Assembly: GCA_002269645.1 (NCBI GenBank) | Contig: NIVC01000150.1 | Span: 372,001-436,000 of the forward strand | DNA: 64,000 bases | Source of the DNA: Macrostomum lignano | Lineage: Eukaryota | Reading direction: 5' to 3' | In this document: positions 5,090 to 62,802 of the stretch, one piece after another | How the letters are laid out: each line of letters begins with the position of its first letter | Position numbering within the stretch: the first letter of the stretch is position 1 | Notes under the pieces: generated by a model | Databases searched by the model: none | The model's input: only the letters and a program-made list of their open reading frames with translations | Told to the model about the DNA's origin: nothing | Made by a program: the position numbers and the translations under genes

Positions 5090-7714
5090 TTAAAAATCTG
5101 ATCTTAGTTTTTCACCTGAAGCAGGCGAACACTTCACCCCTACACGGTTCATTGCGTATCGATAAGGCGAATACTGCAACAGGTGGAACTCGCGTCCCGG
5201 ATGCGCCAGCATGTGATGCCGGAACACGTGACGCCTAAGGCCGTATAACCGGCCGCACAGGGTGCACTTGTGCCCTGGGATGCTTAGGTGATGACGGACA
5301 ATGTGACCGCGAATCAGGCCGGCCGAAGTGGCCGTGAGACTGCAGAGACTGCATCTGTAGGTATCCTCGGCACTTGCACCATCGACTGCCGAGGCGATGA
5401 CTTTTATTACGTGGTGACTCTCGGGTATTGGAGGTCTGTCTCGGGTCGGTTTCATCTCGACTGGCTCTCCGTCGCTGTCACCTTCTGGCTGTTCGGCAGC
5501 TTCAGCGCACGCAGGCGTCGGTGACTTCCCCGGAGTCAAACAGCCCTGTCGCTGTTTCCGATCAGGCTTAGACGATTCGTCCAATAGGAAACCAGAGCTG
5601 CGACTGAAGGCGGGCGGAACAAATGGCAGTAAACTTGATATAACTTGATTCATCTCCACTGTTTCAGAAATAACCAAATCACTGGGCTTACTACTTTGAG
5701 TAGCTTCTTAAACTCTATTCTGAGCTAAATAAAGCTAAATAATAATAATTGATTACACCTGCCCTAATGGGCAGATGTGCAATCGACAGCTCAGCCGCAG
5801 CTATTGCGCGGCGCATCTGAAGGCTGCGTACGGCTGTTCAGTCCAAGGGCTGGGGGGTCGCCACACACCCTCAATTACCCCAGCTAATGCTGGCACCCAT
5901 TTTACAGCTGGGTGAGCTGGAGCAATGCAGAGTTAAATGTCTTGCTCAAGGACACAAATTGTTCCGAGTGAGTCAAGAATCGAACCCCCGACCTTCAACT
6001 CGTGAGTCCGACGCTCTCACTACTAGGCGACAACTCCCCGACTAAAACGCACGCTAAAACCTACCGAACCAAGGCTAAAACCTACGAGTAGCAAGAATAG
6101 AGCGTGAAGCTAATCTCTTATAGGAAGCGCTAAAATCCTCTGTTAACTTAATTCGATGCGTCTTGTCACCTATTATTGGCAGTCTGTCTGCCAGTCTTTC
6201 TTCGAGTAGTTGAAGTGGTGCCCTTCCACTTCAGCCTCGCCAGATGTAGCAGCAGTTGATCCGGCAATAATCGGTTGTCGTCTCTACTTAACCTGCTCGC
6301 GTGCATGCAAGTCGTCTTGTAGCGGTCAGGCACTTTGGCATGGACTCCCAGGATGTGCTTGCGAATGTCGCCCATGCCGTGCGGACTGATGGCCGAGCAG
6401 CCGGAGCAGCGGAATGCTCGCCGATTGGAATGCCGCGTCACAGCCACTTTGTAAGTGCTATAGTAGTCCATTTTGGTGCGCAGGACAGCCAGGGTATTCT
6501 GGAATTCGTAGAATTACTAACCATATGCAAAACAGTTGAAGCAAATCTCATTCAACAAAAGCCATTTTTTAATTTCGGCTTTCAATTTGATTTCTCTTAA
6601 ATTCAAATTTTTACGATAGACAGGTGTAGCCTCGCCAGGCAATCTGGTCGTTGAAGCTACATCTCACTTTGTCAAAGTTAAATCTCACTTTTTCAAAGCC
6701 ACATCTCAACTGTTCTAATAAATTGACAAAGCTAAATCTCAGACCTGTTCAAAAGCTACCGGTAAACCTTACCTGGTCACAAATTCCATTCATCAAAGTC
6801 TGCAGTGCACTCCAAGAATACGGCAAATCAATGACTCGCTCAAGCTCGCTCTCAGTCAGAGACATCAGTGTAGACAGTCGCTGCTCCTCAGTGGCCTCTT
6901 CGTGCGGCTGAATGGGCAGCTGCGGAAGCGGCATCACTGATGCCGGAGATGCCGGACTGTAAAGCAGCGAAGGAAACTCGGCGCCGCTGTCTTCGCCATC
7001 GAAGCTCCTCAAAATGGCGGCGACTCTGCCAGGCCGTTCAGTAGCCAGCCGGAGCAGCATTTGGTCTGGGTAGAGCCGCCAGTTATTCTCCCTGGAGATT
7101 CTGCTGGCCTGACAGCAGACCGTCAGCAAGTCGTGCCCGATGCGGGCGTGCACGCCCATCACGTGACGCCTAGCGTCGGCTAGAGTGCTCGGTCGGACGG
7201 TTGCATTCGGACGTCGGATGGTGTGGAACACGCGGCCGCACTGGCATTTGTACGCCACCGTCCGTCCGCGGCGCATCTGCCGGACCAGACGGTAGTCGGA
7301 GTAGGCTCGCATCTTTCGCATGAGCTCGGCCCGCTGCTCAGGCTCGCTGCACTGATCTTTGAGCAGCAGAACCAGCGCAGACTCAGAGAATGGCAAGCTG
7401 ATCTCCTCTTCCTCGTCGACACCTTCCGCTGCTTCGAAGTGGCTGGCGTTCTGACCGAAGTGCAGCTGGCTGGTTGGCGCGCTGTCCAGCTGCCGAATCT
7501 GCTGCTGGCTGCCGATGCCGGTTCGAGAAGTTTTGTGTGTTACGCTCGCGTCCGCTCTGCCGCTGCTCGGTCGCTTCTGAGGCTCACGCAATATTTGGGA
7601 CAGAGCGGAGCAGGCCGGCTTCGAGCGGCTCCGCAGAACTTTTGGCACCTTAACCGACTCGTCGATAGGAGTCACGACCCGACTGCTGGTCACTTCTTCG
7701 TGGATGCGAATCGC
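5090..7714 (-). CDS. C2H2 zinc-finger protein, 3' exons (two extended-finger domains plus two terminal C2H2 fingers)
   Basis: Exons 7714-6773 (phase 0/0), 6498-6170 (0/2) and 5603-5090 (2/stop), each with canonical AG/GT sites and matching phases. Fingers: YKCQCG..RRHVMGVH, FRCSGC..RKHILGVH, YRCSLC..GHIVRHH, HKCTLCG..RHHMLAH. Confidence 0.8.
5735..6040 (-). mobile_element. tRNA-derived SINE with V/Meta-type central domain
   Basis: The minus strand begins GGAGTTGTCGCCTAGTAGTGAGAGCGTCGGACTCACGAGTTGAAGGTCGGGGGTTCGATTC (A-box and B-box). It continues with GTGTCCTTGAGCAAGACATTTAAC, the conserved core seen in V-/Meta-SINEs, then a 3' hairpin TGCCCATTAGGGCA and an (ATT)n tail. It sits in a zinc-finger gene intron. 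Confidence 0.7.
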
Positions 7715-10626: not shown

Positions 10627-11170
10627 ACTACTGAGTCAGTCAGTCAGTCAGTCAGTCAGTCAGTCAGTCAGTCAGTCAGTCAGTCAGTCAGTCAGTCAGT
10701 CAGTCAGTCAGTCAGTCAGTCAGTCAGTCAGTCAGTCAGTCAGTCAGTCAGTCAGTCACCCACTCACTCAAGTCAGTCAGTCAGTCAGTCAGTCACCCAC
10801 TCACTCAAGTCAGTCAGTCAGTCAGTCAGTCAGTCAGTCAGTCAGTCAGTCAGTCAGTCAGTCAGTCAGTCAGTCAGTCACCCACTCACTCAAGTCAGTC
10901 AGTCACCCACTCACTCAAGTCAGTCAGTCAGTCAGTCAGTCACCCACTCACTCAAGTCAGTCAGTCAGTCAGTCAGTCAGTCAGTCAGTCAGTCAGTCAG
11001 TCAGTCAGTCAGTCAGTCAGTCACCCACTCACTCAAGTCAGTCAGTCAGTCACTCACTCAAGTCAGTCAGTCAGTCAGTCAGTCAGTCACCCACTCACTC
11101 AAGTCAGTCAGTCAGTCAGTCAGTCAGTCACCCACTCACTCAAGTCAGTCAGTCAGTCAGTCAGTCAGCC
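10627..11170. repeat. (TCAG)n microsatellite with periodic TCACCCACTCACTCAAG interruptions
   Basis: Direct inspection. It begins just inside the GTGAGT donor at 11184. Confidence 0.95.
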
Positions 11171-11184
11171 AGTCTCAGACTCAC

Positions 11185-12368
11185 CCCACTCAGGGGATGC
11201 TCAGAGGCAATATGCGCATCAATTCTGGCGGCATCAGTGGACGCCAAGCCGCACTCTGAGCAGTGGTTCAGCCCGAATCTTAGACAGCCTTCCTCGCCGT
11301 CCTTGCCGCTGCATTCAGCCTGATGACTGACAAAGGCCTTCCAGCTCATCGCGCAGAACTGGCAGTTTGGACAGATGAGCGATGAAGCGCCCGAGTGGTG
11401 GTTGGCGCTGACTAATAAGCCGCTGGCGAAGCTGTCCGCATCGCTGTGGCATCGGTCGACATGCTGCTGAACAGCCAGCTGGGAGGGACTCTTTACTAGG
11501 CAGCCGGGCACTCGGCAGTGGTGCAGCAGCCCAGATGAAGCCGACGAGTCAGTTGAGAAATGTCCAACTAGATGTGCTGCTATGTCGGAGAGCGCTAGGT
11601 CAGCGAAACAGTAGGGGCAGGGCATTGGCACCGCCTCCGGGCCTTCGCTGTGGTGCTGCGATTTCAAGTGCTGGATGAGTTGATCCGGCTGCCAGGCGGA
11701 GAAGGCCAAGCAGTGTCCGCAGACGAAGCAGCCGCTAGCGGATTCGAGAGCGCAGACTGTGTTGAAAAGGCGGGCCTGACGTTCCTGCTGCGAGAGCAAG
11801 ATGGCGCGGTGGCGCTTCAGTTTGGCTATGAGGACCTGCAATTAGGATAAGAATTTTGCATAGCGCATATTTTATTAAAGACAAATAAACTTTCACAAGT
11901 TAAAAAAATGCACGCAATTTTCTTGTCATATCAAAAAACACATTGTATACACATGCTGCAGTACAGAATCTAGGTAAAATGTTTCAAAATTCTTAGTGTG
12001 TAAAAATACTTTTAGCTGATCACATACTACAATTTATATAGTCCTATATAACAAAAGTATTATAAATATTAATATATTAAAAACACAGATTAAAACGAAT
12101 ATTGCTTTCTCACAAGCAAAAATTGAATTAATTTAGTGGTATCTAAAACTTAATATAAAATATTTTAAGCACAATTAAAAAGCTTAAAATAACATTGAAA
12201 ATTTTAGAAGACAACTGTACAGTAAAACAGATTTAAAAATTAAATAATTTAAAAAACAAAAAAAAATGTTGTAAAAAGACTCACAATAGCTGATAATGTA
12301 TCGACTTGTTTGGTTTGAGAAGCAGTGCAGTTTAATTCACTTAAACCTTTAATAGTCTGGTAATTCAT
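11185..12368 (-). CDS. C2H2-type multi-zinc-finger protein, 5' exons (probably the same gene as 5090-7714)
   Basis: Exon 11835-11185 (cag|GTC...GGG|gtgagt, phase 0/0) encodes five fingers: CFVC..HLKSQH, CPYC..HLVGH, CRVPGC..HVDRCH, CPNC..HQAEC and CSEC..HIASEH. A candidate first exon at 12368-12285 (MNYQTIKG...TLSAI|gtgagt) splices in frame but is less certain. Confidence 0.7.
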
Positions 12369-20315: not shown

Positions 20316-22571
20316 TCAGGAGCGGCAGTCCCGGTGCGGCGGTGCGGAGTCCACATCGGAGCAGATGGACGGCAGGCTCTCGGTCGGCTGCAGCAGGTGG
20401 TGCACCGCGGCCTCCCGACGGGCGCTTCCGCCGGCTCGGCCGGTGCCGCCGCTGCAGTCCCAGTTCAGCACCCGGTTGATGCTGCAGCGGATCCTGTGGT
20501 GTCCTCGGTGCCGGCCTGACGAGTTGCAATTGGCGAAGTTCGACTGTTGCTGCTGCTGCTGCTGCTGCTGTTGTCGCTTTTTCGATTTCTGACACCTGCG
20601 CGACGCCGAGGTTGCGCAATTCGACTTCGCGCCAATTCGTTGGGCCTTTGAGCAGAGTTGAACCTGCGGCTGACAGGAGGTTGTCAGAGCGTTCTGAGTC
20701 AGGCAGGCCGTTGTCACTGACGCTGCTGCTGCTGCAGCGGACGCTGAGGCGGCGGACAGGGCGGCTACCGACTGTTGAAGCAGCACGAGCACCGACTGCA
20801 CCGGGACCGGGTTGACGCACTGGCACTGACCGGGCGGCATCTCCGCTGCCGGCTGGTGCTGCGACTCGTTCTTCGGCCCCGAATGCAGCTGCTGCTTCTT
20901 CTGGTCGGCCGCGGCGGCGTGAAAGATCCGGCTCTGCGCCGAGGTCAGGCTGTCGTAGGAGCCGATGCGGACCATCACGGACTCGGCCGTGGACGAGGTG
21001 ACGGTCGACGAATCGCACAGCGCCGCCTCCTCCGGATCGGCGGCGCTCGGGCCAGTTTGATTGATAAACTGCTTCAAATCCGTTTCCTTCGGGCCGTGCG
21101 AGTCTTCTTGGCTCCCGGCACCGTCAGTGAGAATTGTGGCCGCCGTGGTTGGGGTCGTCACTTCCAAATATTTTTCCGATTCATGCGGCTGCGACGGCAT
21201 GCTTGTGTGGTTTTTTAGCGTGGCGCCTTTTGCCCGGCTTGTATCCTCTGCTTTCTGCTGCTGCTGGACTGGGGATTCCACAATCTGATAATTGACCGAG
21301 TAAATCTCGTTGAACGGGTACTGCTGATAAACCACTGCCACTGCCGGCTGGTGCAGCTGCCGGGCCCTGCAGTTTGAGCGGCCCGTGGCGCTGTTCTGGC
21401 TGCTGTCGAACTCGCCGCCGCCTTCGCCGAAGTCCTTCATCCGGTCCCTCTCCGGCGAGCCGTCCTCGGTCATCTTGTCGCTGTTCGAGTCAGCCAGTTC
21501 CAGGCTGCTGTACTCCCGCTTCGCTCGCTCCTCGACCGCCTTCACCGCCGCCTCAGCTTCGGCAGCGTCGTCAGACTGAGGCGCTCCGCCAGCCCCGGCT
21601 GGTTCGCTCTCGCTCTGCTTCACCTGATTTGAGCCGGTCTGCTGCGCCTCCACTGCAGTGCTGTCCGCGTCTACCTGCTGCCCGGTCTCCAGCTCGATGG
21701 TCTGCTCCGACACCGACACCCCCCGCTGCTGGCATGGATCATGGTGGTAGAGCAGCTGCTGGGCTGGCTTCACCGAGCCGCTGCTCAAATCATCATCATC
21801 GTCTTCCTCCTCCTGCTTCGCTTCCTCGGGTTCCGGCGGCAGGGCCGCGTCCTGCGGCTGTTCACTGGCCGGCTCGGCGTTCTGACCGTCCTGCGGCCTC
21901 TCGCTGGCCGGCTCAGCGTTCTGGCCGCTGTCCTCGTCGCTGTGCGAGTCTACCACTAGCGGCATCGCCGTATCCTTCCGGCTGACGGTTCCCTGGCCCG
22001 GTTCCTCTTGCAGGACGTTGCGCAGACTTTCGCTGGTCATGGAGACGCCGAGGCCGTGCACGCCGAAGTTGAAGTAGGAGTTGGCTGGGCTGGCCTCGCT
22101 GCCCGAAATTGTGGTGGCGTCGCTGTTGGAATCGGCCAGCGAGATGGCCGGTTCGGAGCCCAGTTCCAGCGGCTCCATTTCCAGCTTCTTGCCCCATGCT
22201 GAAGTATCTGGCTCTTGAACGCCGTCTTGACTGCTCGCATCATCGACTGTGGTGAGTTTCGGCCGATCGTCGCGGTTCGGCTTTGCATCCGAGTTGAGCA
22301 CGTCGCCTATCAGGGAGTCGTCAGCGCAGCTGCGCAGCTCGCCGGCACCGCAGCTGAACTCGCCAACAGCCTCGTGCGTCGCGCCGCAGTGGCAGACGAC
22401 GACCAGCTTGACTCGACGACCGGCGCAGCCCGAGCGGCCGCCGCGGCTCAGGACGATCGGGCAGAACGTGAACACTCGGATTCGCTGAGCTGGCGAATTC
22501 GGCTCGTTGTTCCTGGCGTGTTGCTGACGGCATTCGACGACAAGGCAGGGCAGCGGTGCCGCCTGCGTCAT
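20316..22571 (-). CDS. Intronless 751-aa protein of unknown function: N-terminal Cys/His cluster, acidic and Gln/Ala-rich low-complexity body
   Basis: Uninterrupted 2.25-kb GC-rich ORF between AT-rich flanks. N-terminal CLVVEC..H...FCP....C....VCHCGATH....FSC. Internal duplications (QNAEPASExPQD twice, LADSNSD twice), poly-Q and poly-A. No family recognised. Confidence 0.75.
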   Translation of the reverse strand: MTQAAPLPCLVVECRQQHARNNEPNSPAQRIRVFTFCPIVLSRGGRSGCAGRRVKLVVVCHCGATHEAVGEFSCGAGELRSCADDSLIGDVLNSDAKPNRDDRPKLTTVDDASSQDGVQEPDTSAWGKKLEMEPLELGSEPAISLADSNSDATTISGSEASPANSYFNFGVHGLGVSMTSESLRNVLQEEPGQGTVSRKDTAMPLVVDSHSDEDSGQNAEPASERPQDGQNAEPASEQPQDAALPPEPEEAKQEEEDDDDDLSSGSVKPAQQLLYHHDPCQQRGVSVSEQTIELETGQQVDADSTAVEAQQTGSNQVKQSESEPAGAGGAPQSDDAAEAEAAVKAVEERAKREYSSLELADSNSDKMTEDGSPERDRMKDFGEGGGEFDSSQNSATGRSNCRARQLHQPAVAVVYQQYPFNEIYSVNYQIVESPVQQQQKAEDTSRAKGATLKNHTSMPSQPHESEKYLEVTTPTTAATILTDGAGSQEDSHGPKETDLKQFINQTGPSAADPEEAALCDSSTVTSSTAESVMVRIGSYDSLTSAQSRIFHAAAADQKKQQLHSGPKNESQHQPAAEMPPGQCQCVNPVPVQSVLVLLQQSVAALSAASASAAAAAASVTTACLTQNALTTSCQPQVQLCSKAQRIGAKSNCATSASRRCQKSKKRQQQQQQQQQQSNFANCNSSGRHRGHHRIRCSINRVLNWDCSGGTGRAGGSARREAAVHHLLQPTESLPSICSDVDSAPPHRDCRS

Positions 22572-39192: not shown

Positions 39193-41611
39193 TCATTTAA
39201 ACCCGTCCATCTGCCAGAGCTGCTCGTCCCCGCGGCCGCAGGCAACCATGGCCGGCTGGGACTTGGGCTGGGCGGCCAGCAACGGCACACCCATGCAGAG
39301 ACCGGTGTAAACGTGTCGCACCCGGAAGGAGCTGCCGCCCGCGCTGTCGGCAGCGAACAGCTGTTTGCTATCGGCATCGTCGCAGGTCTCCAGGGTGAGC
39401 TCGGCCCCCGAGTAGGCCAACGACCAGCAAACGTCGTCGCTGCGAAGTCGATTATCGGCGCCCCAGGCGAACAGCTGGTTGCCGCCCTGGCCGTGGCAGG
39501 GGCCCAGCCCCAGCTTGGCGTGCGCCTGATGGCCCATCGTGTCTGCGCACATCTTGTACCGGCTGTTGCCCATGGGGCCCAGGTATCTGAGGGGTGGGAT
39601 TGGGTGGGCGGGCGAGTGATGAACCGGTGAGGGAACAGGTAAAGTCGGAATCATTGGAACCGGTGAGGGAACAGGTGATTTTTGAATAATTGGAACCAGT
39701 GAGGGAACAGGTGATTTTTGAATCATTGGAACCGGTGAGGGAACAGGTGAAAACGGAATAAGTGGAACCGGTAAATCACAGGCAAATATAAGTCGGACCC
39801 GGTGAGATTTACCTGGCATTGGCAGGAAAATGCGACTCGGGATAAATATTTTCCAAATACCAGCCAAAAGATTTACAATTCAGTTTGGCTTTCAATTTCA
39901 ATCTGGCAGTCACGTCGCCATAGGCAACGGAGCGCAGGGCGGGGTTGATTCGCAGCAGCAGGTCTTTGTAGTCGTCCATCCACACGGCGGCGGTCCGCAT
40001 GGCGTTCTTGTTGAGTATGTTGGCCACGCCGCCCGGCCACGAGTAGGGCGAGATCTGCGGATTCGCATGGTCACTTGTTGTCAATCAAAGACAGGGGACA
40101 ATGACCAACTAGAGACAGATGGGTTTCGGGACAATGACTAACTAGAGACAGGGTATCGGGACAATGACCAACTAGAGACAGGGGGTATCGGGACAATGAC
40201 CAACTAGAGACAGGGGGTATCGGGAAAATGACCAACTAGAGACAGGGGGTATCGGGCGATGACCAACTAGAGACATCGGGCCAATGACCAACTCGAGACA
40301 GGGGGTATCGGAAAAATAACCATCTCAAAGACAAGCCAATGTGACCAATCAAAGACAGCAATGACCAATCAAAGACACCTCAATGACTAATCAAAAAGAA
40401 GCCAATGACCAATCAAAGACACAAGTCAATGACCAATCAAAGACAAGCCAATGTGACCAATCAAAGACAAGTCAATAACCGATCAAAGACAAGCCAATAT
40501 GACCAATCAAAGACAAGTCAATGACCAATCAAAGACAAGCCAATATGACCAATCAAAGACAAGTCAATAACCAATCAAAGACACCTCAATGACCAATTAT
40601 AGACAACTCAATTACCAATCAAAGACAACTCAATGACCAATCAAAGACAAGCCAATATGACCAATCAAAGAGAAGCCAATATGACCAATCAAAGAGAAGC
40701 CAATATGACCAATCAAAGACAACTCAATAACCAATCAAAGACACCTCAATGACCAATCATAGAGAACTCAATGACCAATCAATGACCAAAGACAAGCCAA
40801 TATGACCAATCAAAGACAAGCCAATATGACCAATCAAAGACAACTCAATGACCAATCATAGACAACTCAATGACCAATCATAGAGAACTCAATGACCAAT
40901 CAAAGACAACTCAATGACCAAAAATCAGCACCTTGCGAAAGACGTGACCAACTCGGGAGCACGTGACCAGCAGCAGGTGGCCGCCGCACATCCACACTCG
41001 AAAGGACATCTCCAAGTTCTCGCCACCCCAGATTTCCATGCCGGAATCATAGGCGCCGATCTCGAAGAAATAGCGCCTGTCAATGGTGAAGAGCCCGCCA
41101 GCCATGGTCGGGGTGTACAGCGGCATGGATCGGTCCTGCTTTCGCCTATCGAACTCGCGCTGGGGCACCGGGTACCAGCGGAAATTCAATCGCCAGTTGA
41201 ATCCGCCCCAGGTGCTGTCCGAGGCCGGCACGTATTGGAAATTCTGCTCAGATATGACATCGATAATCGGGCAGGCTACCGCCCGGCGGTTCCGTTTGAT
41301 CTCGGCTAGCAGGGGCTCCAGCCAGCCTGTGGTGGCCTCGCAGTGCGCGTCCAAGAAAGTGATGGTGTCGCCCTGGGCAACCGAGGCGCCACGGAGGCGA
41401 GCTCGGATCAGGCCGCTCCGGCTGGACATTCGCAGCACCCGAGTTGGCGTGGACAGGGTGGCAGTGTACTCGTCTAGAGGCTTGCCCAGGAACGGCCGGG
41501 TGCTGCTATCGTCAACTAGGATGACCTGCGGACGGAGACGCTTTAATTATTGTTGATTTCCTCGAATGTCTCCATAACAACAGCTGTCATTCAGTCCTCC
41601 ATTGATTCAAT

Positions 41612-41684
<73 letters not shown>

Positions 41685-41869
41685 TAGATAGACAGACAGA
41701 CAGACAGACTGACTGACAGGCAGACAGACAGACAGACAGACAGACTGACTGACTGACAGGCAGACAGACAGACTGACTGACAGGCAGACAGACAGACAGA
41801 CAGACAGACTGACTGACTGACTGACAGGCAGACAGACAGACAGACAGGCAGACAGACAGACAGACAGAC

Positions 41870-41925
<56 letters not shown>

Positions 41926-42869
41926 TGACAGACAGACAGACAGACAGACAGATAGACAGACAGACAGATAGACTGACAGACAGACAGACAGATAGACAGA
42001 CAGACAGATAGACAGACAGACAGACAGACTGACAGGCAGACAGACAGACTGACAGACAGACAGACAGACAGACAGACAGGCAGACACTAAGACACTAAGA
42101 CATTTTTAGCCTGCTTTGGTCGTTCCCAATAGGGATTAATTCTTAATTTAAGTTATGAACCATGAAAAACACAGTTTAAGCATTGTTATTATCAACTTTC
42201 AACGATTAAGCATGAACTAACTACTAGTAACAGTAGTAGGTAAAGTAAGCTAAGCGCATAATAAAACGCGCGAACCTCTTTAAGACAGCCGGCGCACGAC
42301 CTGTCAATAACAGAGTGCACCGTCCTGAGCAGGGTGCTCCAGGCCTCGTTGTGGAACACGATCACCACGCTGGTGGTGGGCAGCCGATCCGGGTACAGCT
42401 TGGTCTGGCAGGCCGACATTCGATAATCGGGCAGCGTCCGGTTCAGCGCCATTAAGTCGCTGGCAACCAGGTTGAACTGGTTCTCCGAGAACAGGATCTT
42501 TGCGCGTTCGGCCAGCTCTGGCGGAACCACAACAGCCGCGCCGTTGTCGCCGGGGCGGGAGGGCGCCAGGCCCACCGCGTTGACCAGATTGTTCCACAGA
42601 GCGCCGACACCCCCGGCGCCGCCGCCTCCCCCAAGGCCGGCGGAGGACGGGAGCGGCGAAGAAGACGACGCTGCCGCATCTTTGGCGACGTTGAAAAGCT
42701 CGACGGCTGAGGCTTCAACTGGGTTGGGCGAACCGGCGTAGAGCAGGCAGGCGAGGCCCAGCAGGCTGAGCAGAAGAACGGCGACGACTGCCGACCGATT
42801 GGAGAGGCGGCCGCGACGCTGGTTGCAGCATTGGCGGCAGCGACGACGGCGGCAGACGAGCGACAGCAT
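39193..42869 (-). CDS. GALNT1: Polypeptide N-acetylgalactosaminyltransferase, GALNT1/13-like, 607 aa
   Basis: Exons 42869-42276, 41525-40932, 40054-39813 and 39586-39193 with phases 0/0/2 consistent. It has a type II TM anchor, [33 protein letters not shown] (DXH), [39 protein letters not shown] and VGHVFRK, plus a C-terminal ricin-type lectin with CxD motifs. GALNT1 versus GALNT13 is not resolvable by eye. Confidence 0.95.
39620..39805. repeat. Degenerate ~37-bp repeat in GALNT intron 3
   Basis: GGAACCGGTGAGGGAACAGGTGA... about 5 copies. Confidence 0.8.
40095..40918. repeat. Compound minisatellite in GALNT intron 2 (AATGACCAACTAGAGACAGGGGGTATCGGG grading into AATGACCAATCAAAGACA...)
   Basis: Direct inspection. 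Confidence 0.9.
41610..42085. repeat. (GACA)n microsatellite in GALNT intron 1
   Basis: Direct inspection. Confidence 0.97.
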
Positions 42870-43994
42870 TCGATAAAGTGATTACCGGTGCCGGGGTGCC
42901 GGGGCTGCAGCGGAGGCCGCTGTGGTGCGCAGACAGGAGTGGCTGCTGCTGCTGGCTGTCGCCGCTGGAATTTTGGGGAAAGCCAAACGGCAATAGAAAT
43001 TTGACCACGGGTGCGAAATTGTTAATCAACAATAAACATATTGTTTACACATTGAGGTAGGTAAACATTTACTAAAGCAGCTGTTGAAAACTGTCGGGAA
43101 AGGCAATGAAGAAAAGAAAAATTCGTGCTGACACTAATTAGCAAAACAATAAAAGTGGCCCATCAATTGGCTGGGCGGCGTTTTTCAGCGTCAGGGTGGT
43201 GGGCAGTCGGCAGTTTTCAACACTACTCTCAGAACACTTAGACAGCCAGTGCCTGTCAAAAGTATTCAGACCGCAATCCAGCTTCTTTATAGTGCGCCGC
43301 CGCCTATTCCACTATTCATCTTTCATTCCGACTTGGAACTTTCCGACTATGGAATGTTGCTTTTTAAAATATCTATAGGTAGGGGGGGGGCGGGGACACG
43401 GCGCGGCCGTCCGCCGATATCAAAGCGACGCCGACAGGCTGCGGGCGCACACGCTAATAGATAGATAAAGGAATTCGCACTTTGCGCAGAGGATGGTCAT
43501 TACAAAGGAATGGCTGGCTGGGTTGACGGCGCGCACCGAATGAAATCTGCGAGCAGTTGGGAGTCTGGACTTTTATTGCGCACGGACGTCATCAAAATAG
43601 GCGGATATTTTCTACGGAAGCTTGCCGTCTAACGCCTGGATTATTTTATCTGTGGTACGAGTAAATAAATACGATTTATTTACTAATGACTAGATCCAAT
43701 ATATTCGTATCTTTTAAACCAGCGTAGTTAATACTCAAAGACTTGGACAGTGCAGAAGTTCTTCATGGATAAAGGAATTAACATCATATGATAGACGAAG
43801 AATAAAATCACTTGAAAGGTAATCCAAAATATTTCCAAAATTTGTCTATGGATGCTCCCAGTTCATATGTGCAGATTTATTGTTGCCCTGAAACCCACCA
43901 AACTGTCTATGGTTCTCAGCAGCGAAGCTCATCATAAAAGTACTTGGCCACACCCTCGAGTAGAATAAAGCGGCACTTCTGCAAGAAACCAACA

Positions 43995-44537
43995 ATGCAA
44001 GGTCGTCGAACACTTGCTAGCACAAAACAATCGGCCAAGATGCTAGCAAAAGGCGACAATGGTACGCGAAAGCAGCAGATAAGTCAGGCGCAACAGCAGC
44101 AAAAGAAGCAATCGTCAAGCGCATGCCGGGAACTCTGCACCAGTTGTCAATCGCGGATTCAAGACATTCTCCAAGGCGAACACGATAGAAGCTGCGGCGA
44201 GCGAGACTTTGAAATTTTTCAAACAACAATGCCCGACTATGCTGTTACTATGGTGCGCCAGAAACTGCTCAAACTAACCGAATCAAACAATTATCTGACT
44301 GGAGATGACGATAGCGAAATTTCTGGCAAAATAGGCAAATATCTCAGCCGGTTCATGGAGGAACGATTCGGCGGCGTCTGGAATGTCATTGTCGGGCAGG
44401 ACTTTGCCGCCTCCGTCATCTACGGAGCAAACAGTTTCCTGCACTGCGGCATCGATTCGGTGAACTACCTGCTGTTCTCCTGGCAGCCAGTCAGCTTGTT
44501 CAGCGACTGCATCGATAACAGCCTGAGGCTTTATTGA
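43995..44537 (+). CDS. Dynein light chain (LC8/Dynein_light family) domain protein with ~60-aa N-terminal extension, single exon, 180 aa
   Basis: First ATG at 43995 (the ORF track starts at an upstream TTG). FEIFQTTMP...ISGKIGKYLSRFMEERFGGVWNVIVGQDFAASV...FLHCGIDSVNYLLFS matches the DLC fold signature (W.vivG..F). Confidence 0.85.
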   Translation: MQGRRTLASTKQSAKMLAKGDNGTRKQQISQAQQQQKKQSSSACRELCTSCQSRIQDILQGEHDRSCGERDFEIFQTTMPDYAVTMVRQKLLKLTESNNYLTGDDDSEISGKIGKYLSRFMEERFGGVWNVIVGQDFAASVIYGANSFLHCGIDSVNYLLFSWQPVSLFSDCIDNSLRLY

Positions 44538-57756: not shown

Positions 57757-60198
57757 TTACTTTGCTGTTGTCTTGGCGGCGCTACAGCTAGTGGACGTCC
57801 AGCCGCCGCAGTAGAGAGGAGTGAAACGGTTCCTGCCGGTGGAAGCTGTCAAATCGACTGGCGACGACGTCTTCTGCCAGCACGGCATCTGGGCTTTCCG
57901 TCGGCCGTTGTAGTCGTCGCTGAACAGTTTTTTCTTGTGAATTCGACGATCTGAATTTGTGGAATGCTGTGGCCGATGCTGGCACTGTTCTTTGCCTGGC
58001 CGCACTATGCTCGAATTGCACTGCATTTCGACAGCTTGCTGCTGCAGTGGGGAATTCGGATGGTTTAATTCGATAATCTTCTCGGGTTCTTGCAAACTTT
58101 GCCGCGCAATTTCACCATTGTTGGTATTTTGCAGAGTCACCTGAAGTAGCTGACTTTGCTGAGTCTGATGCATATTCTGCTCAAGAAATGGACTCCGTTG
58201 AGTTGGATATTCGTTCTGTTGAAGCACTGGACTCCGTTGAGTTGGATATTCGTTCTGTTGAAGCACTGGACTCCGTTGAGTTGGATATCCGTTCTGTTGA
58301 AGCACTGGACTCCGTTGAGTTGGATATTCGTTCTGTTGAAGCACTGGACTCCGTTGAGTTGGATATCCGTTCTGTTGAAGCACTGGACTCTGTTGAGTTG
58401 GATATTCGTTCTGTTGAAGCACTGGACTCCGTTGAGTTGGATATTCGTTCTGTTGAAGCACTGGACTCTGTTGAGTTGGACATCCGTTCTGTTGAAGCAC
58501 TGGACTCCATTGAGTTGGACATCCGTTCTGTTGAAGCACTGGACTCCGTTGAGTTGGACATCCGTTCTGTTGAAGCACTGGACTCCGTTGAGTTGGACAT
58601 CCGTTCTGTTGAAGAACCAGATTCTGCTGAGTTGGGTGTCCGTTCTGTTGAAACACTGGACTTTTCTGCTTCTGTTGAACAGTTTGTTGAAGAATTTGAC
58701 TTTGTTTAGGGTGTTGCAGGTTTTGCTGAAGCACACATGTATGACTCTGTTCGGGTTGCAAGCTTTCCTGATAGACCTGACTCTTCTCGGGCTGTTGCTG
58801 AATTTGGTTATTCAAGTGACCTTGATAGAGCCTTTGTAGATTGGCCTGATGTGTTTGAACTTGCAGAAGTGGCTGAGGATTGCTGTTCTGAAGTGTGAGA
58901 TTTGGCTGAAGCAGTTCATTTTGCTGGGGTTGAGCATACACAGATTTCTGAATCATTCGACCCTGCTGTTGCTGCTGCAGATTCTCCTGAAGCAGTTGGA
59001 TTTGCCTTTGTTGCTGCAAATACTTCTGAAGCAGCTCAATCTGCTGCCTTTGCTCCAGATTCCTTTGATGAAGCTGGCTCTGTTGGAGTCGTTGCAGGTT
59101 CTTCTGAAGCAACTTGATTTCCTTTTTTTGCTGCAGATTATTCTGATGCAACTGGCTCTGCTGCAATTGTTTCAAATGCTTTTCAAGCTGACTCTGTTGC
59201 TTTTGCTGCAGATTCCTCTGTTGTAACTGGCTCTGCTGAAGCTGTTGCATATTTTTCTGAAGCAGCTGGATCTGCTTTTGATGCTGCAAAATCTTCAGGT
59301 GCAACTTACTCTCTTGTTCGTACTGCAAATTCAAGTTATTTTTAACAAACTGGATCTCCTTTTGTTGCCGACTTTTCTTCCTTGATTGGTTTTGTTGAAG
59401 TTGTTGCAGAACTTTCTGATTTAGCTCCAGCCGCTGCAGTTTTTCCAGATACTTTTTCCGTTTATCTCTAATAAGCAACGCTTCATTTCGATTTTGCTCC
59501 GTTGGAACTAATGAATTTGTTGGCTCCGATGAGCGCCGCGGGATAACGTAGGTCGCGCTGTCCAGAACTCGACGGCTGACGCAGAAATCGTTGTCGCTTG
59601 CCTCGCACGAACTCGAATCTTCGTTGTCGCTAATTCCCCATGCGTTGCTTTGGTTTAGTTCATCAATGTTATCATTAAATATGCCTTCAAAGCCCCAATC
59701 AAACAGCTGCCCATCGGTGTCGGCCTTGAGCTTGCGCTCAATCTTACTGATGGTGCTCATTCGGAAACTTTCACCACCACCGCCGCCTTCGCCGCCTTCG
59801 CCACCTTCGCCACCTCCACCATCAATGTTAGTCATTTTGATACTTTCGCCACTGCGGCCGCCATCAACGCCACCGCCGTCGCCTCCATCGATGTCATTGA
59901 CAAGAGGAGTATCTTCGCCACTCTCAACAGGTTCTTCCTCGCCACCATCGTCACCATAGACCTCGATGTAGTCATCGCCACCCGGGTCGGCTTCGTGAAC
60001 TGCTCCGATGCCCCGATCGCAGATGATTTTCCACAGCTCTCTGCGGTATTGCAGCTTGCATTCGTTGATTTGGGATCGCAATGGCTCCAGGTCGATGCCA
60101 AGGTCTATGACTGAACCGAGCACGGCCGGTGTGGGCGCGCAGAAAGTCGTGTCGTTTTCGTCAGGCATCCTTAGACTTCTCTGCGTAAATCGGTTCAT
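57757..60198 (-). CDS. Intronless Gly/acidic/Gln-rich protein of unknown family, paralogue 1 (813 aa; probable start Met11 at 60168)
   Basis: 2.4-kb ORF. The N-terminal 54 aa from Met11 are 29/54 identical, ungapped, to the ORF at 61498-62802. It also contains ~25-aa Gln/Leu repeats, a 13-aa tandem repeat and a C-terminal FTPLYCGGW. Confidence 0.85.
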   Translation of the reverse strand: MNRFTQRSLRMPDENDTTFCAPTPAVLGSVIDLGIDLEPLRSQINECKLQYRRELWKIICDRGIGAVHEADPGGDDYIEVYGDDGGEEEPVESGEDTPLVNDIDGGDGGGVDGGRSGESIKMTNIDGGGGEGGEGGEGGGGGESFRMSTISKIERKLKADTDGQLFDWGFEGIFNDNIDELNQSNAWGISDNEDSSSCEASDNDFCVSRRVLDSATYVIPRRSSEPTNSLVPTEQNRNEALLIRDKRKKYLEKLQRLELNQKVLQQLQQNQSRKKSRQQKEIQFVKNNLNLQYEQESKLHLKILQHQKQIQLLQKNMQQLQQSQLQQRNLQQKQQSQLEKHLKQLQQSQLHQNNLQQKKEIKLLQKNLQRLQQSQLHQRNLEQRQQIELLQKYLQQQRQIQLLQENLQQQQQGRMIQKSVYAQPQQNELLQPNLTLQNSNPQPLLQVQTHQANLQRLYQGHLNNQIQQQPEKSQVYQESLQPEQSHTCVLQQNLQHPKQSQILQQTVQQKQKSPVFQQNGHPTQQNLVLQQNGCPTQRSPVLQQNGCPTQRSPVLQQNGCPTQWSPVLQQNGCPTQQSPVLQQNEYPTQRSPVLQQNEYPTQQSPVLQQNGYPTQRSPVLQQNEYPTQRSPVLQQNGYPTQRSPVLQQNEYPTQRSPVLQQNEYPTQRSPFLEQNMHQTQQSQLLQVTLQNTNNGEIARQSLQEPEKIIELNHPNSPLQQQAVEMQCNSSIVRPGKEQCQHRPQHSTNSDRRIHKKKLFSDDYNGRRKAQMPCWQKTSSPVDLTASTGRNRFTPLYCGGWTSTSCSAAKTTAK
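58180..58620. repeat. 39-bp coding minisatellite (QQNEYPTQRSPVL, ~11 copies)
   Basis: In frame within the 813-aa ORF. Confidence 0.95.
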
Positions 60199-61497
60199 TT
60201 TGAGTCCTTGTTCAATTAAAAATCATGGATGCTCCTTAATATCAAAAGATTTTAAATAAAACCTCTTGAAGGATTTTGCATTCGATGTGCATTTTAAACT
60301 GCCATAGACAGCCAAACTATGGGGACATAAGTAGTAATATCTTGAGTTAAAAATAGCTAATACTCAAGTCGAAGCAGGATACAGTGGCTCGGTGGAAACG
60401 CGTCCGACGAGTACAAAAACAAAACTTTGAACGGGGAATCATGTGCCGCTAATTATACTGTAGGGTCCACCTATAAGGGCCGGGCAAGCAGCGGTATGCT
60501 CTCGGGCTTGCAAACGTCGGGGAGAACCGGTTTTGGCCCGAGGTGAGTGAGCCTGAAGACTGGGCAGGGGCAGATAAAGTGCTCATGGTTTTCACTGCCT
60601 GCGCGACAAAAAGGGGCACCGCTCCTCAGGTACCTGGTCCTAAAGGAAACGGTGGCAAGCAAAGCAGCCATGGCCGGAGAGGGCCACGCGCCATGCTGAC
60701 TGCTCTAAGATCCCTGCGGGTTGAGCCAAAGGCGAGCTCTACGCAGGAGGGGGAGGGACAGGGGACGGCAGCGAGGGATTGTCTGCAATTGGGATTTGAT
60801 CACCGAGATGGGGATGGGGCCTCTGGGCCCGGCCTGAGAAGCGCGCTGGCGGAGCTGGCCTTGGCCAGCAGGTCCGGGATCTATTTGAGCTGCACCTCAT
60901 TGCCCAGCGCGAGCCCATTGAGCTGGGCGTTGCAGTCCAGGACAGATTTGGAGCTGGTAGTACTATGGCAGAGAGCCTGAAGGGCTGCTTGGCTGTCGGA
61001 CTGAAAATAGTATGGGACCATATGTACACGCGTGTGCTTTTTCAAGTTTCAGTTGCGAATGCAAAGTAAAATCCGTCAATTGCAAAAAATGACGAATACG
61101 AGCGTACTGTACAACCTTTGGCCCAGTTCTACTCTTCTCAATGAATCATATTGTTCTTGCTCATTCTAATAATTCGTTAATGGTATAAACGTAAAGAAGT
61201 GGACTGCATTGACAATTATTCATGCCTTGTACTTGAGTATAGGCTGCAGAATACGGGTCAACCTTTCTCATTCGATTGGTACCGAGGAAGGTTATTACAC
61301 TTCTATTGTACAGGCATTTAATTAGACAGCATACGGAGGGGCTTTAAAAATAAAAAATTATTAACATACGTTTAGTTGCGTAGGAGGATATTTAAAACCG
61401 ACACAAACTCGAATTGTTGCGTTGTTCAAAAAAGTAGCCATGAAATATTTGTATGTAGTTAGCCTGGACAGTGTTGAGTAGCTTACTGACGAGTTCG

Positions 61498-62802
61498 TTA
61501 CCGTTCCGTACCGGAGTTCTTGTGCCGCTTCTTCTTGGCTATGCACGTGGCAGATTTGTTCCAGTCGCCGCATTTCATTGGAACAAAAGAGTGACTACCT
61601 ATGTGGCGCCGCGCCGGCGCACTTCCTGCTTCGCTCTTCAGTGATTCGTCGGCAGCTGTTGTGCTGTGCGGAGAGGAGCAGCTGCTGCTGCTGCTGCTGG
61701 ATGTGCTGGACAAGTTGTAGTCATGCAGGTGAGACATTCGCCGGCTCAGGTACGCCAGCCGTGGATTGACTGGATGCGACTGCTGCGTACATGCTTCGAA
61801 CGGGTTTTCTGCATAATACCGCTGCATTGGATAGGCGGACCTGGGCTCTAGATACGACTTCTGCTGAGATAGGAAATCTCGCTGTTGTTGTTGAAGAAGA
61901 AAATTACTTTGACTATTGTATTGCCGTTGAATGTGAGGTTTCTGCTTCTCTGCATAAGACTGCGGCTCAAATTGCTGATGCAACTGTTGTGGCTTGCGTC
62001 GCGATTTAGCCGGTCGTGGATGCTTGGAATGGGGCAGACGGTGCAGAGGAGGCTGCACCTGAGCTTCAGGATACAGCAGCTGTTGCGCTTGCATTGCGTT
62101 TGGAGGACCTGGCGGGGGGATTTTTTGCGGAATAAACTGCTGCTGCTGACCTGCAGCCTGGGGTTGGTAACCGGACTGCTGTTGCGACCGTTGGTTTGGC
62201 CCCTGGTTCCGCAAAATCGTTGCACCTTGTTGCATCATCATCTGCGCCTGTTGAGTCAGAAGCGTCTCAGCCAGAGTTGCTGAGTTTGGTGACGAAGTCT
62301 GCGAATAGGCCAGGACTGGGCTGCTGCACTGTTGGACTCCTTGGCTTTTGCGATTGCGCCATCTGGCGTTGCTGCCGCCTTTGCAAACTGCACCAGAGTT
62401 CGATGCTGAAGTACCAAATCTTCTGCTTCTGGCGTTGCTCTGGTTTTCATCGTCGCCTTCCTCAGCTGGCTGCTCCTCGCCAATGCCACCGCCGCCGCCA
62501 ATACCACCACCGCCGCTGCCGCCGCCGTTGCCACCGCCACTGCTGCCGCCACCGCCACGGACGCCGCCGCCGAGGCCACCGCCACTGCTGCCGCCGCCGC
62601 CGCCATCGCCTCCACCACCGCCGCCACTATCGCTACCCTGAATACCCTGATCGCAGATGATGTTCCACAATTCCTTGTGGTAGCGCAGCTTGCAAGCTTG
62701 AATCCGATCGCGAGCTGGGGCCAGGTCGACGCCAAGGTCGATTATGCTGCCGAACAAACCGAAGGCAGGGGTGCAGAAGACCGTGTACTTTTTACCGGAC
62801 AT
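61498..62802 (-). CDS. Intronless Gly/Gln/Ser-rich protein of unknown family, paralogue 2 (434 aa)
   Basis: Shares the N-terminal domain and a C-terminal FVPMKCGDW motif with paralogue 1; poly-Gly, Q/P-rich centre, basic tail KKKRHK. Confidence 0.85.
   Translation of the reverse strand: MSGKKYTVFCTPAFGLFGSIIDLGVDLAPARDRIQACKLRYHKELWNIICDQGIQGSDSGGGGGGDGGGGGSSGGGLGGGVRGGGGSSGGGNGGGSGGGGIGGGGGIGEEQPAEEGDDENQSNARSRRFGTSASNSGAVCKGGSNARWRNRKSQGVQQCSSPVLAYSQTSSPNSATLAETLLTQQAQMMMQQGATILRNQGPNQRSQQQSGYQPQAAGQQQQFIPQKIPPPGPPNAMQAQQLLYPEAQVQPPLHRLPHSKHPRPAKSRRKPQQLHQQFEPQSYAEKQKPHIQRQYNSQSNFLLQQQQRDFLSQQKSYLEPRSAYPMQRYYAENPFEACTQQSHPVNPRLAYLSRRMSHLHDYNLSSTSSSSSSSCSSPHSTTAADESLKSEAGSAPARRHIGSHSFVPMKCGDWNKSATCIAKKKRHKNSGTER

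What the first reader, a model, noticed from the sequence alone, without database searches (positions are those of the whole stretch)
57757..62802. Tandem intronless paralogues sharing an unrecognised 54-aa N-terminal domain
Seen: MPDENDTTFCAPTPAVLGSVIDLGIDLEPLRSQINECKLQYRRELWKIICDRGI (60168-60007) versus MSGKKYTVFCTPAFGLFGSIIDLGVDLAPARDRIQACKLRYHKELWNIICDQGI (62802-62641). They are 29/54 identical, ungapped, with three invariant Cys and a Trp. Everything downstream (poly-Gly, then Gln-rich) is unalignable, which points to purifying selection on a compact folded domain heading a long disordered or prion-like region. I recognise no Pfam family. The L..P...I...KL.Y..E+..+I spacing has only a faint by-eye resemblance to BESS-type dimerisation motifs. 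Inference: a lineage-specific family of condensate-forming or oligomerising proteins, possibly retrogene-derived and germline-expressed.
Basis: partly seen in the sequence, partly recalled or inferred. Interest (0 to 1): 0.78.

Follow-up and report, generated by a model that had tools for sequence, protein, structure and literature searches.

The report
Flatworm-only disordered protein family, conserved ends
Two neighbouring genes of the flatworm Macrostomum lignano belong to a small, undescribed, apparently genus-restricted family of mostly disordered proteins that keep only a short N-terminal strand-plus-helix motif and a short C-terminal motif; this is a real but fairly ordinary orphan family with no functional data yet.

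Summary
ORF-A (57757-60198, minus strand, 813 aa) and ORF-B (61498-62802, minus strand, 434 aa) share 29/54 ungapped N-terminal identities (BLASTP E=8e-18; at most 12/54 in 20,000 shuffles).

The window is Macrostomum lignano assembly Mlig_3_7, contig NIVC01000150.1. Both ORFs are annotated there as hypothetical proteins from RNA-seq-guided gene models.

An exhaustive HMMER search of 1.84 billion proteins found true relatives only in M. lignano, plus one transcript-like contig in two unidentified read sets. There are at least six paralogous loci, including a second tandem pair.

The N-terminal element is under purifying selection (dN/dS about 0.2-0.3; 0/354 nt differences between duplicate loci against about 1.4% neutral). 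AlphaFold2 does not model it as a compact fold. It gives a short strand-like segment with alternating hydrophobic and Asp/Gly residues, then one helix of about 26 residues, in a largely disordered Gly/Gln-rich protein.

Pfam, PDB sequence search and Foldseek find nothing. That rules out BESS, F-box and transposon ORFs at these sensitivities. There are no retrocopy hallmarks.

My best reading is motif-anchored disordered scaffold or adaptor proteins, probably nuclear. The function itself is inference. Interest is low to moderate.

The parts
57757..60198 (-). ORF-A, 813-aa single-exon coding region. It corresponds to GenBank PAA89508.1 (BOX15_Mlig024224g1), a 735-aa model that skips six repeat units. 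An alternative start is Met11 at 60168.
60007..60108 (-). ORF-A conserved N-terminal core (aa 31-64): IDLGIDL strand-like segment followed by an amphipathic helix.
   Evidence: AF2 helix 38-64.
59644..59655 (-). ORF-A N-Q-S-N motif (aa 182-185), preceded by an acidic stretch. The last Asn is invariant in the family alignment.
58939..59496 (-). ORF-A Gln/Leu/Lys-rich region predicted as one long helix (aa 235-420, pLDDT mostly above 90). It is built partly from 78-nt and 153-nt repeats. No 3.5-residue periodicity was found.
58175..58662 (-). ORF-A in-frame 39-nt minisatellite, 12.5 copies of a 13-aa unit (QQNGYPTQRSPVL-like). Copy number differs in the duplicate locus and in the annotated model.
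57799..57825 (-). ORF-A C-terminal motif FTPLYCGGW (aa 792-800).
61498..62802 (-). ORF-B, 434-aa single-exon coding region, annotated as a gene in GCA_002269645.1.
62641..62742 (-). ORF-B conserved N-terminal core (aa 21-54): IDLGVDL segment followed by an amphipathic helix.
   Evidence: AF2 helix 28-53, pLDDT about 80.
62485..62625 (-). ORF-B poly-Gly/Ser linker (GGN-type triplet repeat).
62434..62445 (-). ORF-B N-Q-S-N motif (aa 120-123), acidic before and basic after. N123 is invariant in the family alignment.
61561..61587 (-). ORF-B C-terminal motif FVPMKCGDW (aa 406-414), followed by the basic tail AKKKRHK.
60199..61497 (-). Spacer between ORF-B and ORF-A, presumably the 3' UTR of B and the promoter/5' UTR of A. 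It contains a block of about 900 nt, partly G+C-rich, with no substitutions between the duplicate loci.

Best explanation
ORF-A and ORF-B are an old tandem duplicate pair from a small, previously undescribed protein family that is so far seen only in Macrostomum. Members share one layout. It starts with an N-terminal core of about 34 aa: a strand-like segment of alternating hydrophobic and Asp/Gly residues, then a helix of about 25 residues (R..I..CK.RY..E-hydrophobic-W..-hydrophobic-C). Next come a flexible Gly/acid-rich linker, an acidic N-Q-S-N motif followed by basic residues, a long and fast-evolving disordered Gln-rich and often repetitive middle, and a C-terminal F-V-P-M-x-C-G-x-W motif with a basic tail that resembles a nuclear localisation signal. 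Shown here: the genes are real, transcribed and lineage-restricted, and only the short terminal motifs are constrained. Inferred here: the proteins act as motif-anchored disordered scaffolds or adaptors. The N-terminal strand-plus-helix and the C-terminal motif would dock onto partners or onto each other, the Gln-rich middle would add weak multivalent self-association, and the basic clusters suggest a nuclear site of action.
For: Significant paralogy at both termini. The exhaustive HMMER search returned six true relatives, five from M. lignano and one from a Logan read set. The same three motifs and their order recur across paralogues. There is a second tandem pair, P0012 plus an intact unannotated 459-aa ORF in L008. 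The whole arrangement is preserved in the duplicate locus L007. On selection, the N-domains show 0/354 nt differences against about 1.35-1.4% in flanks and 1.15-1.45% in the disordered middles. Domain dN/dS is 0.25 for A versus B (dS saturated) and 0.18 for P0002 versus its tandem copy, while the ORF-B middle is at 0.72. AF2 models only the N-helix and Gln-rich helices as ordered. Gene models are RNA-seq-guided. P0009 sits on mRNA-like 1.6-kb contigs with an AATAAA near the 3' end. Basic clusters lie near the C-termini.
Against: No functional, localisation or expression-pattern data could be found. AF2 does not pack the C-terminal motif against the N-terminal helix; its pLDDT there is about 41. 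P0004/P0005 lack the C-terminal motif in their annotated isoforms. The second tandem copy has Val in place of the motif Cys. The long helix of ORF-A has no heptad periodicity, so coiled-coil self-association is not supported. Nuclear localisation rests only on basic clusters seen by eye. The phyletic restriction could partly reflect the weak two-sequence profile used for the single exhaustive search.
Confidence: 0.6

Rival explanations
1. The N-terminal element plus the Gln-rich region make these proteins homo-oligomerising, condensate-forming or prion-like germline proteins.
For: ORF-A is 18.5% Gln and ORF-B is 11.3% Gln plus 13.4% Gly. The proteins are largely disordered, with long Gln-rich helices. 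The N-helix has a hydrophobic stripe with 3-4 spacing (L, I, C, Y, L, I) that is compatible with helix-helix pairing.
Against: The 186-residue helix has no 3.5-residue periodicity; 739 of 1,000 shuffles did as well. There are no RGG or aromatic-rich sticker patterns. No germline or any tissue information could be retrieved. AF2 monomer models say nothing about oligomers.
Confidence: 0.2
2. The N-terminal core derives from, or mimics, the 'DECKRRY-x4-WK-x3-D' helix pair of PPP-family (PP1-like) Ser/Thr phosphatases. That would mean exonisation of a phosphatase gene fragment.
For: The only PDB sequence hit of the family profile is phosphatase 8pq7_A residues 136-152, DECKRRFNVRLWKIFTD, against the family's NECKRRYHREVWKILCD.
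Against: E=0.84 is not significant. The similarity is confined to 17 residues and does not extend to either side. No phosphatase (PPP) family appeared among the Pfam hits, even at E<=5. AF2 predicts one continuous helix rather than a helix-turn-helix.
Confidence: 0.04
3. The ORFs are spurious or decaying: open frames in low-complexity repeat DNA, or transposon- or retrocopy-derived sequence rather than functional host genes.
For: The window is full of minisatellites that stay open in several frames. Parts of ORF-A are tandem repeats. Duplicate copies in L007 and L002 carry 1-nt frame breaks. Retrotransposon ORFs lie near the L002 and L008 copies.
Against: The conserved termini are not repetitive and show dN/dS well below 1. 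There are zero substitutions in the N-domains between duplicates. Copy number is low and the flanking genes differ at each locus. No TE-domain Pfam hit was found. No poly(A) tract follows either ORF. The frame breaks sit in short homopolymers of a PacBio assembly, and intact versions exist.
Confidence: 0.06
4. They are secreted reproductive or adhesive proteins (seminal fluid, cement gland or shell gland). The hydrophobic N-terminus would act as a signal peptide and N-Q-S as a glycosylation sequon.
For: ORF-B begins MSGKK followed by a moderately hydrophobic stretch. N-Q-S fits the N-x-S/T sequon. Many lineage-specific Macrostomum genes are reproduction-related (titles).
Against: In P0008 and P0009 the same core lies 87 residues from the N-terminus. 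The ORF-A N-terminus is acidic. The hydrophobic part is the conserved strand-plus-helix, not a cleavable leader. P0009 lacks the sequon.
Confidence: 0.05

Closest known systems
Taxonomically restricted (orphan) flatworm genes without known domains, such as the flatworm-specific gene studied in M. lignano in PMC5816591
   Same: They are restricted to the lineage, annotated only as hypothetical proteins, and match no Pfam family. They evolve fast outside short conserved elements.
   Different: No homology to any described flatworm-specific gene was found or tested by name. This family is defined by its own N-terminal strand-plus-helix core and C-terminal FVPM.CG.W motif, neither of which is described anywhere I could find.
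Disordered adaptor or co-regulator proteins that work through short terminal motifs flanking Gln-rich regions (general class, from established knowledge)
   Same: Only short motifs at the two ends are conserved. The middle is variable, repetitive and Gln-rich, and there are basic clusters.
   Different: No partner is known, and none of the motif patterns I checked by eye fits. Those were the eIF4E-binding Y-x4-L-hydrophobic motif, RVxF, LxxIxE, the Keap1 'QD.DLGV' degron, the LC8 TQT motif and eh1/WRPW.
PPP-family phosphatase core helix pair (PDB 8pq7_A residues 136-152)
   Same: Both carry a 17-residue string of the form ECKRR[YF]-x4-WK-x3-D.
   Different: The match is not significant (E=0.84). 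It has no flanking similarity and no catalytic residues, and the predicted secondary structure differs.
   Same: Both are short helical elements of about 40 aa.
   Different: Neither window protein nor any of the seven relatives scanned gave a Pfam hit to BESS, even at permissive thresholds.

Membership tests
BESS motif (PF02944) | Match to the Pfam BESS profile | tested here: not met
   hmmscan of ORF-A and ORF-B at E<=1 and of seven relatives at E<=5 gave no BESS hit.
F-box (PF00646 and relatives) | Match to an F-box profile, with the LP..I...L....CK.W spacing | tested here: not met
   No Pfam hit. The family spacing CK..Y..E.W differs from the F-box CK.W (direct reading).
Zf-CpG_bind_C (the UniRef label on one P0005 cluster entry) | Match to Pfam PF12269 | tested here: not met
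   P0004 and P0005 gave 0 families at E<=5 with current Pfam.
PPP-family Ser/Thr phosphatase (fragment) | Significant sequence similarity extending beyond the ECKRRY..WK helix pair, or metallophosphatase motifs | tested here: not met
   The only hit is 17 aa at E=0.84. No phosphatase family appeared among the Pfam hits.
Transposon-encoded ORF | TE protein domains, high copy number, or terminal repeats around the unit | tested here: not met
   No TE Pfam domain. There are about six loci, each with different flanking genes (IFT122-like WD40, HYOU1/HSP70, TFIIS).
Processed retrogene | Intronless copy of an intron-bearing parent, poly(A) remnant, dispersed position | tested here: inconclusive
   ORF-A, ORF-B, P0002 and P0008 are single-exon while P0005 has three coding exons. 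However, no A-run of 8 or more follows either ORF, and the copies are tandem, which points to DNA-level duplication.
Globular protein domain with a known fold | Confident compact AF2 model and a Foldseek match | tested here: not met
   pTM 0.21 and 0.24. Only a single N-terminal helix is ordered in the element. Foldseek against the PDB gave 0 matches.
Canonical coiled-coil protein | 3.5-residue hydrophobic periodicity over the long helix | tested here: not met
   The strongest period is 4.35, which reflects the 26-aa repeat. Power at 3.4-3.7 was exceeded by 739 of 1,000 shuffles.
Secreted protein with an N-terminal signal peptide | Cleavable hydrophobic leader at the extreme N-terminus in all members | tested here: not met
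   The core lies 87 residues in for P0008 and P0009, and the ORF-A N-terminus is acidic. No dedicated signal-peptide predictor was available.
Macrostomum-restricted orphan family (the filing used here) | Relatives only within the lineage despite an exhaustive search | tested here: met
   hmmsearch over 1.84 billion representatives gave true hits only from M. lignano plus one Logan read-set protein. The word-indexed searches and the metagenome scan added nothing. Caveats: the profile had only two sequences, and the organism behind SRR30276804/SRR30276812 is unknown.

The most novel reading that the evidence does not exclude
The N-terminal strand-plus-helix core and the C-terminal FVPM.CG.W motif are a co-evolving head-to-tail pairing module that arose de novo in Macrostomum. 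It would let these disordered Gln-rich proteins polymerise into a lineage-specific nuclear or germ-granule-like assembly. Tandem duplication and in-frame minisatellite expansion would tune valency.
Probability: 0.1. Interest if true: 0.55.

Novelty: new member of a known kind. Interest (0 to 1): 0.3.

Why it matters
If the reading holds, this adds one small, cleanly delimited orphan family to M. lignano, a flatworm with working transgenesis and RNAi. Two very short conserved motifs bracket a freely evolving disordered region, so the family is a convenient case for studying how lineage-specific disordered proteins arise, duplicate in tandem and change repeat number. It does not bear on a long-standing open question. 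Orphan 'hypothetical proteins' are very common in flatworm genomes, and no phenotype, partner or expression pattern is known.

Tried and rejected
- **Word-indexed protein searches:** The two-sequence and six-sequence N-domain alignments returned nothing, and full-length P0009 returned only P0008.
- **False positives in the exhaustive search:** Three of its nine hits were rejected after reading the sequences. P0003 is a bacterial TPR-like repeat protein, and P0006 and P0007 are translated repeats.
- **Pfam:** The scan of both window proteins at E<=1 and of seven relatives at E<=5 gave no credible family.
- **Structure-based searches:** The PDB profile search gave one non-significant phosphatase hit. 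Foldseek against the PDB gave no match.
- **Metagenome scan:** The search for the CK[LR][RQ][YF]x[RKQ]E[VL]W pattern produced 30 pattern matches, none of them a relative.
- **Literature and supplements:** Searches for the six locus tags and the two SRR accessions found nothing.
- **Rfam:** The window and the spacer gave nothing meaningful.
- **Linear motifs considered by eye and rejected on spacing:** the eIF4E-binding Y-x4-L-hydrophobic motif, PP1 RVxF, B56 LxxIxE, the Keap1 DLG degron (the QD prefix is missing), the LC8 TQT/GIQVD motif, the BC-box, a ribbon-helix-helix fold (no second helix or turn), and a conserved zinc site (only two Cys are invariant, and they lie on different helix faces).
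- **Not allowed by the tools:** The L007 copy could not be included in the AF2 alignment.
Full report
**Observation**

Each heads a long continuous ORF. ORF-A is 57757-60198 (813 aa; an in-frame Met lies 10 codons upstream of the quoted Met). ORF-B is 61498-62802 (434 aa). In-frame stops lie shortly upstream of both ORFs.

The 54-residue stretches are 29/54 identical without gaps, including three Cys and one Trp. BLASTP gives E=8e-18. In 20,000 shuffles the identity never exceeded 12/54. A tblastn scan of the whole window found no third copy.

BLASTP also aligns the C-termini, GRNRFTPLYCGGWT-STSCSAAK with GSHSFVPMKCGDWNKSATCIAKK, at E=0.003. That score was reached in 1 of 5,000 shuffles. Both proteins also carry an acidic N-Q-S-N motif.

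**Source and gene status**

The exact ORF-B product is a called gene on contig NIVC01000150.1 of assembly GCA_002269645.1. This is the Mlig_3_7 assembly of the free-living flatworm Macrostomum lignano (PMC5730564).

ORF-A corresponds to PAA89508.1 (BOX15_Mlig024224g1), a 735-aa hypothetical protein. That model differs from the ORF only by omitting 78 residues, which is six 13-aa units of the in-frame 39-nt minisatellite. The 'intron' is therefore repeat slippage, and both coding regions are effectively single exons.

The Mlig_3_7 annotation was built from a genome-guided RNA-seq assembly (StringTie/TACO, TBONE, TransDecoder). A gene model there implies transcript evidence. I could not obtain tissue-level expression. 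The locus tags do not occur in the searchable literature or in the supplements of three relevant papers.

**Family**

Two word-indexed searches with N-domain alignments found nothing. The single exhaustive HMMER search of 1.84 billion representatives gave nine hits. After reading the sequences, three are repeat-driven false positives: P0003 is a bacterial TPR-like protein, and P0006 and P0007 are translated repeats.

Six are true relatives:
- P0001 is a near-identical copy of ORF-A.
- P0002 is Mlig025130; Mlig012493 is in the same 90% cluster.
- P0004 and P0005 are Mlig028124.
- P0008 is Mlig005397.
- P0009 is known only from 1.6-kb mRNA-like contigs in read sets SRR30276804 and SRR30276812, whose organism I could not identify.

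All named members are M. lignano 'hypothetical' or 'uncharacterised' proteins. A search with full-length P0009 retrieved only P0008, and a metagenome scan found no relatives.

An HMM scan of the fetched loci found an unannotated second copy just downstream of P0002. It is frameshifted in L002 but is an intact 459-aa ORF in the duplicate locus L008. The family therefore contains two independent tandem pairs.

The window pair itself is preserved, with its upstream IFT122-like WD40 neighbour, in the duplicate contig L007 at about 97.4% DNA identity. This fits the known redundancy and three subgenomes of this neopolyploid assembly.

**Architecture**

Alignment of the members shows a shared order of elements:
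1. A core of about 34 residues: [IV]-D-hydrophobic-G-hydrophobic-D-[LV], then R/Q..I..CK[LR][RQ][YF]..E-hydrophobic-W.[IV][IL]C. The invariant residues are D, G, D, I, C, K, E, W and C.
2. A Gly/acid-rich linker.
3. An acidic N-[QN]-[SK]-N motif followed by basic residues.
4. A long, unalignable, Gln-rich and often repetitive middle.
5. F-[VT]-P-[LM]-x(1-2)-C-x(1-2)-W near the C-terminus, usually followed by a basic cluster (AKKKRHK, SKRRHGK, SKRRI).

In P0008 and P0009 the core lies 87 residues from the N-terminus. P0004 and P0005 lack the C-terminal motif in their annotated isoforms, and their gene has three coding exons.

**Selection**

Between the window and L007, non-coding flanks differ at 1.35-1.39% and the disordered middles at 1.15-1.45%. 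The two N-terminal elements show 0 differences in 354 nt, and the ORF-A C-motif and tail 0 in 84 nt. About five differences would be expected in the N-elements at the neutral rate.

Nei-Gojobori estimates for the core:
- A versus B: dN 0.34, dS 1.37 (saturated), ratio about 0.25.
- P0002 versus its tandem copy: dN 0.07, dS 0.37-0.40, ratio 0.18.

Estimates for the middles rest on few substitutions: 0.72 for ORF-B (12 non-synonymous, 5 synonymous) and 0.21 for ORF-A. Purifying selection on the N-terminal element is therefore supported.

**Structure**

AlphaFold2 with the family alignment gives low global confidence: pTM 0.21 for ORF-B and 0.24 for ORF-A.

In ORF-B the only ordered parts are a helix at 28-53 (pLDDT about 80) and two Gln-rich helices. 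The C-terminal motif stays at pLDDT about 41 and unpacked.

In ORF-A the N-helix is at 38-64, and one continuous helix spans residues 235-420 at pLDDT mostly above 90. The 13-aa repeats and the rest are disordered. That long helix has no 3.5-residue hydrophobic periodicity, so a canonical coiled coil is not supported.

The N-terminal 'domain' is therefore not a compact fold. It is a strand-like segment with alternating hydrophobic and Asp/Gly residues, followed by one amphipathic helix. The conserved hydrophobic positions on that helix follow a 3-4 spacing (L, I, C, Y, L, I), with an extra hydrophobic cluster (W, I, C) at its end (read). Foldseek against the PDB returned nothing.

**Comparison with known families**

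Pfam gives no family for either window protein or for the seven relatives scanned, even at permissive thresholds. That excludes BESS, F-box, TE domains and the UniRef 'Zf-CpG_bind_C' label at this sensitivity.

The family profile has a single, non-significant PDB hit (E=0.84). It is the DECKRRFNVRLWKIFTD helix pair of a PPP-family phosphatase, against NECKRRYHREVWKILCD in the family. I treat this as chance resemblance, because it is 17 residues long with no flanking similarity.

There are no retrocopy hallmarks. No A-runs follow the ORFs, the arrangement is tandem, and an intron-bearing member exists.

**Interpretation**

Shown: this is a real, transcribed, lineage-restricted family with at least six paralogous loci. 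It expanded partly by tandem duplication, and only short elements at the two ends, plus one internal motif, are constrained.

Inferred: the proteins act as motif-anchored disordered scaffolds or adaptors. The N-terminal strand-plus-helix and the C-terminal motif are docking elements, for partners or for each other. The Gln-rich middle contributes weak multivalency, and the basic clusters suggest the nucleus.

I put about 0.85 on the descriptive part and about 0.25-0.3 on the functional part.

**Verdict**

The element is a short motif rather than a folded domain, two further shared motifs were missed, and nothing supports a retrogene or BESS link.

Orphan disordered proteins are common in flatworm genomes, so interest is low to moderate (0.3). 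The family is undescribed but of a familiar kind.

Noticed in passing
window 60401-61300 (spacer between ORF-B and ORF-A): About 860 aligned nt with zero substitutions between the window and the duplicate locus L007, where about 12 would be expected at the 1.35-1.4% seen in the flanks. Only indels differ, and one of them is 37 nt. Positions 60401-61000 are 59.5% G+C. Rfam and Pfam recognise nothing here, and the stretch is not repeated in the other fetched loci. It could be a promoter/UTR under constraint or a recent gene-conversion tract.
   Followed up: partly
L008 8037-9416 (+), and L002 12026-13383 (+): An unannotated family member of 459 aa lies in tandem downstream of P0012/P0002. It has a (GGKA)n Gly/Lys-rich linker in place of the Gly/acid one, and Val replaces the Cys of the C-terminal motif. 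It is intact in L008 and broken in L002 by 1-nt deletions: one frameshift in the coding region and one just after the ATG.
   Followed up: partly
L007 10001-12037 (duplicate of ORF-A): The duplicate copy of ORF-A is interrupted after residue 462 by a 1-nt deletion next to a G-to-A change that creates a TAA stop. It also has two further 1-nt deletions and a 157-nt repeat deletion. The 1-nt deletions lie in or next to short (2-4 nt) homopolymer runs of a long-read assembly, so real pseudogenisation and assembly error cannot be told apart.
   Followed up: partly
window 58175-58662: An in-frame 39-nt coding minisatellite of 12.5 units. Its copy number differs between the window, the duplicate locus (about four units fewer) and the annotated transcript model (six units fewer).
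   Followed up: yes
window 39193-42869 (-) and 43944-44537 (+): Exons of a polypeptide GalNAc-transferase-like gene: the start of Glycos_transf_2 at 42192-42869 and a Ricin_B_lectin domain at 39193-39867 (E=1e-14). A dynein light chain type 1 ORF lies at 43944-44537 (E=9e-11).
   Followed up: partly
window 20316-22571 (-): A 751-aa ORF, acidic and Ser-rich with a poly-Gln run near its C-terminus, has no Pfam match. It may be another uncharacterised disordered protein.
   Followed up: no
window 5090-5677 (-), 6749-7693 (-), 11161-11841 (-): ORFs with weak, sub-threshold C2H2 or Di19-type zinc-finger matches at 5090-5677 and 11161-11841. The ORF at 6749-7693 has no Pfam match, but its sequence looks related to them by eye.
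   Followed up: no
window 10.6-11.3 kb, 25.8-26.7 kb, 33.5-36.4 kb, 37.5-38.9 kb, 45.8-47.3 kb: Large minisatellite arrays that stay open in several reading frames on both strands, for example SVSQ repeats and LSLCMSLCP repeats. They inflate the mechanical ORF list and are probably non-coding.
   Followed up: no
P0008 and P0009 (L006, L003, L004): This sub-branch shares an extra motif, DDW-x-NWNNSS, and a long His/Gly/Pro-rich N-terminal extension. L003 and L004 carry different 5' leaders upstream of a common point, which could reflect alternative 5' exons, trans-splicing or assembly chimeras.
   Followed up: no
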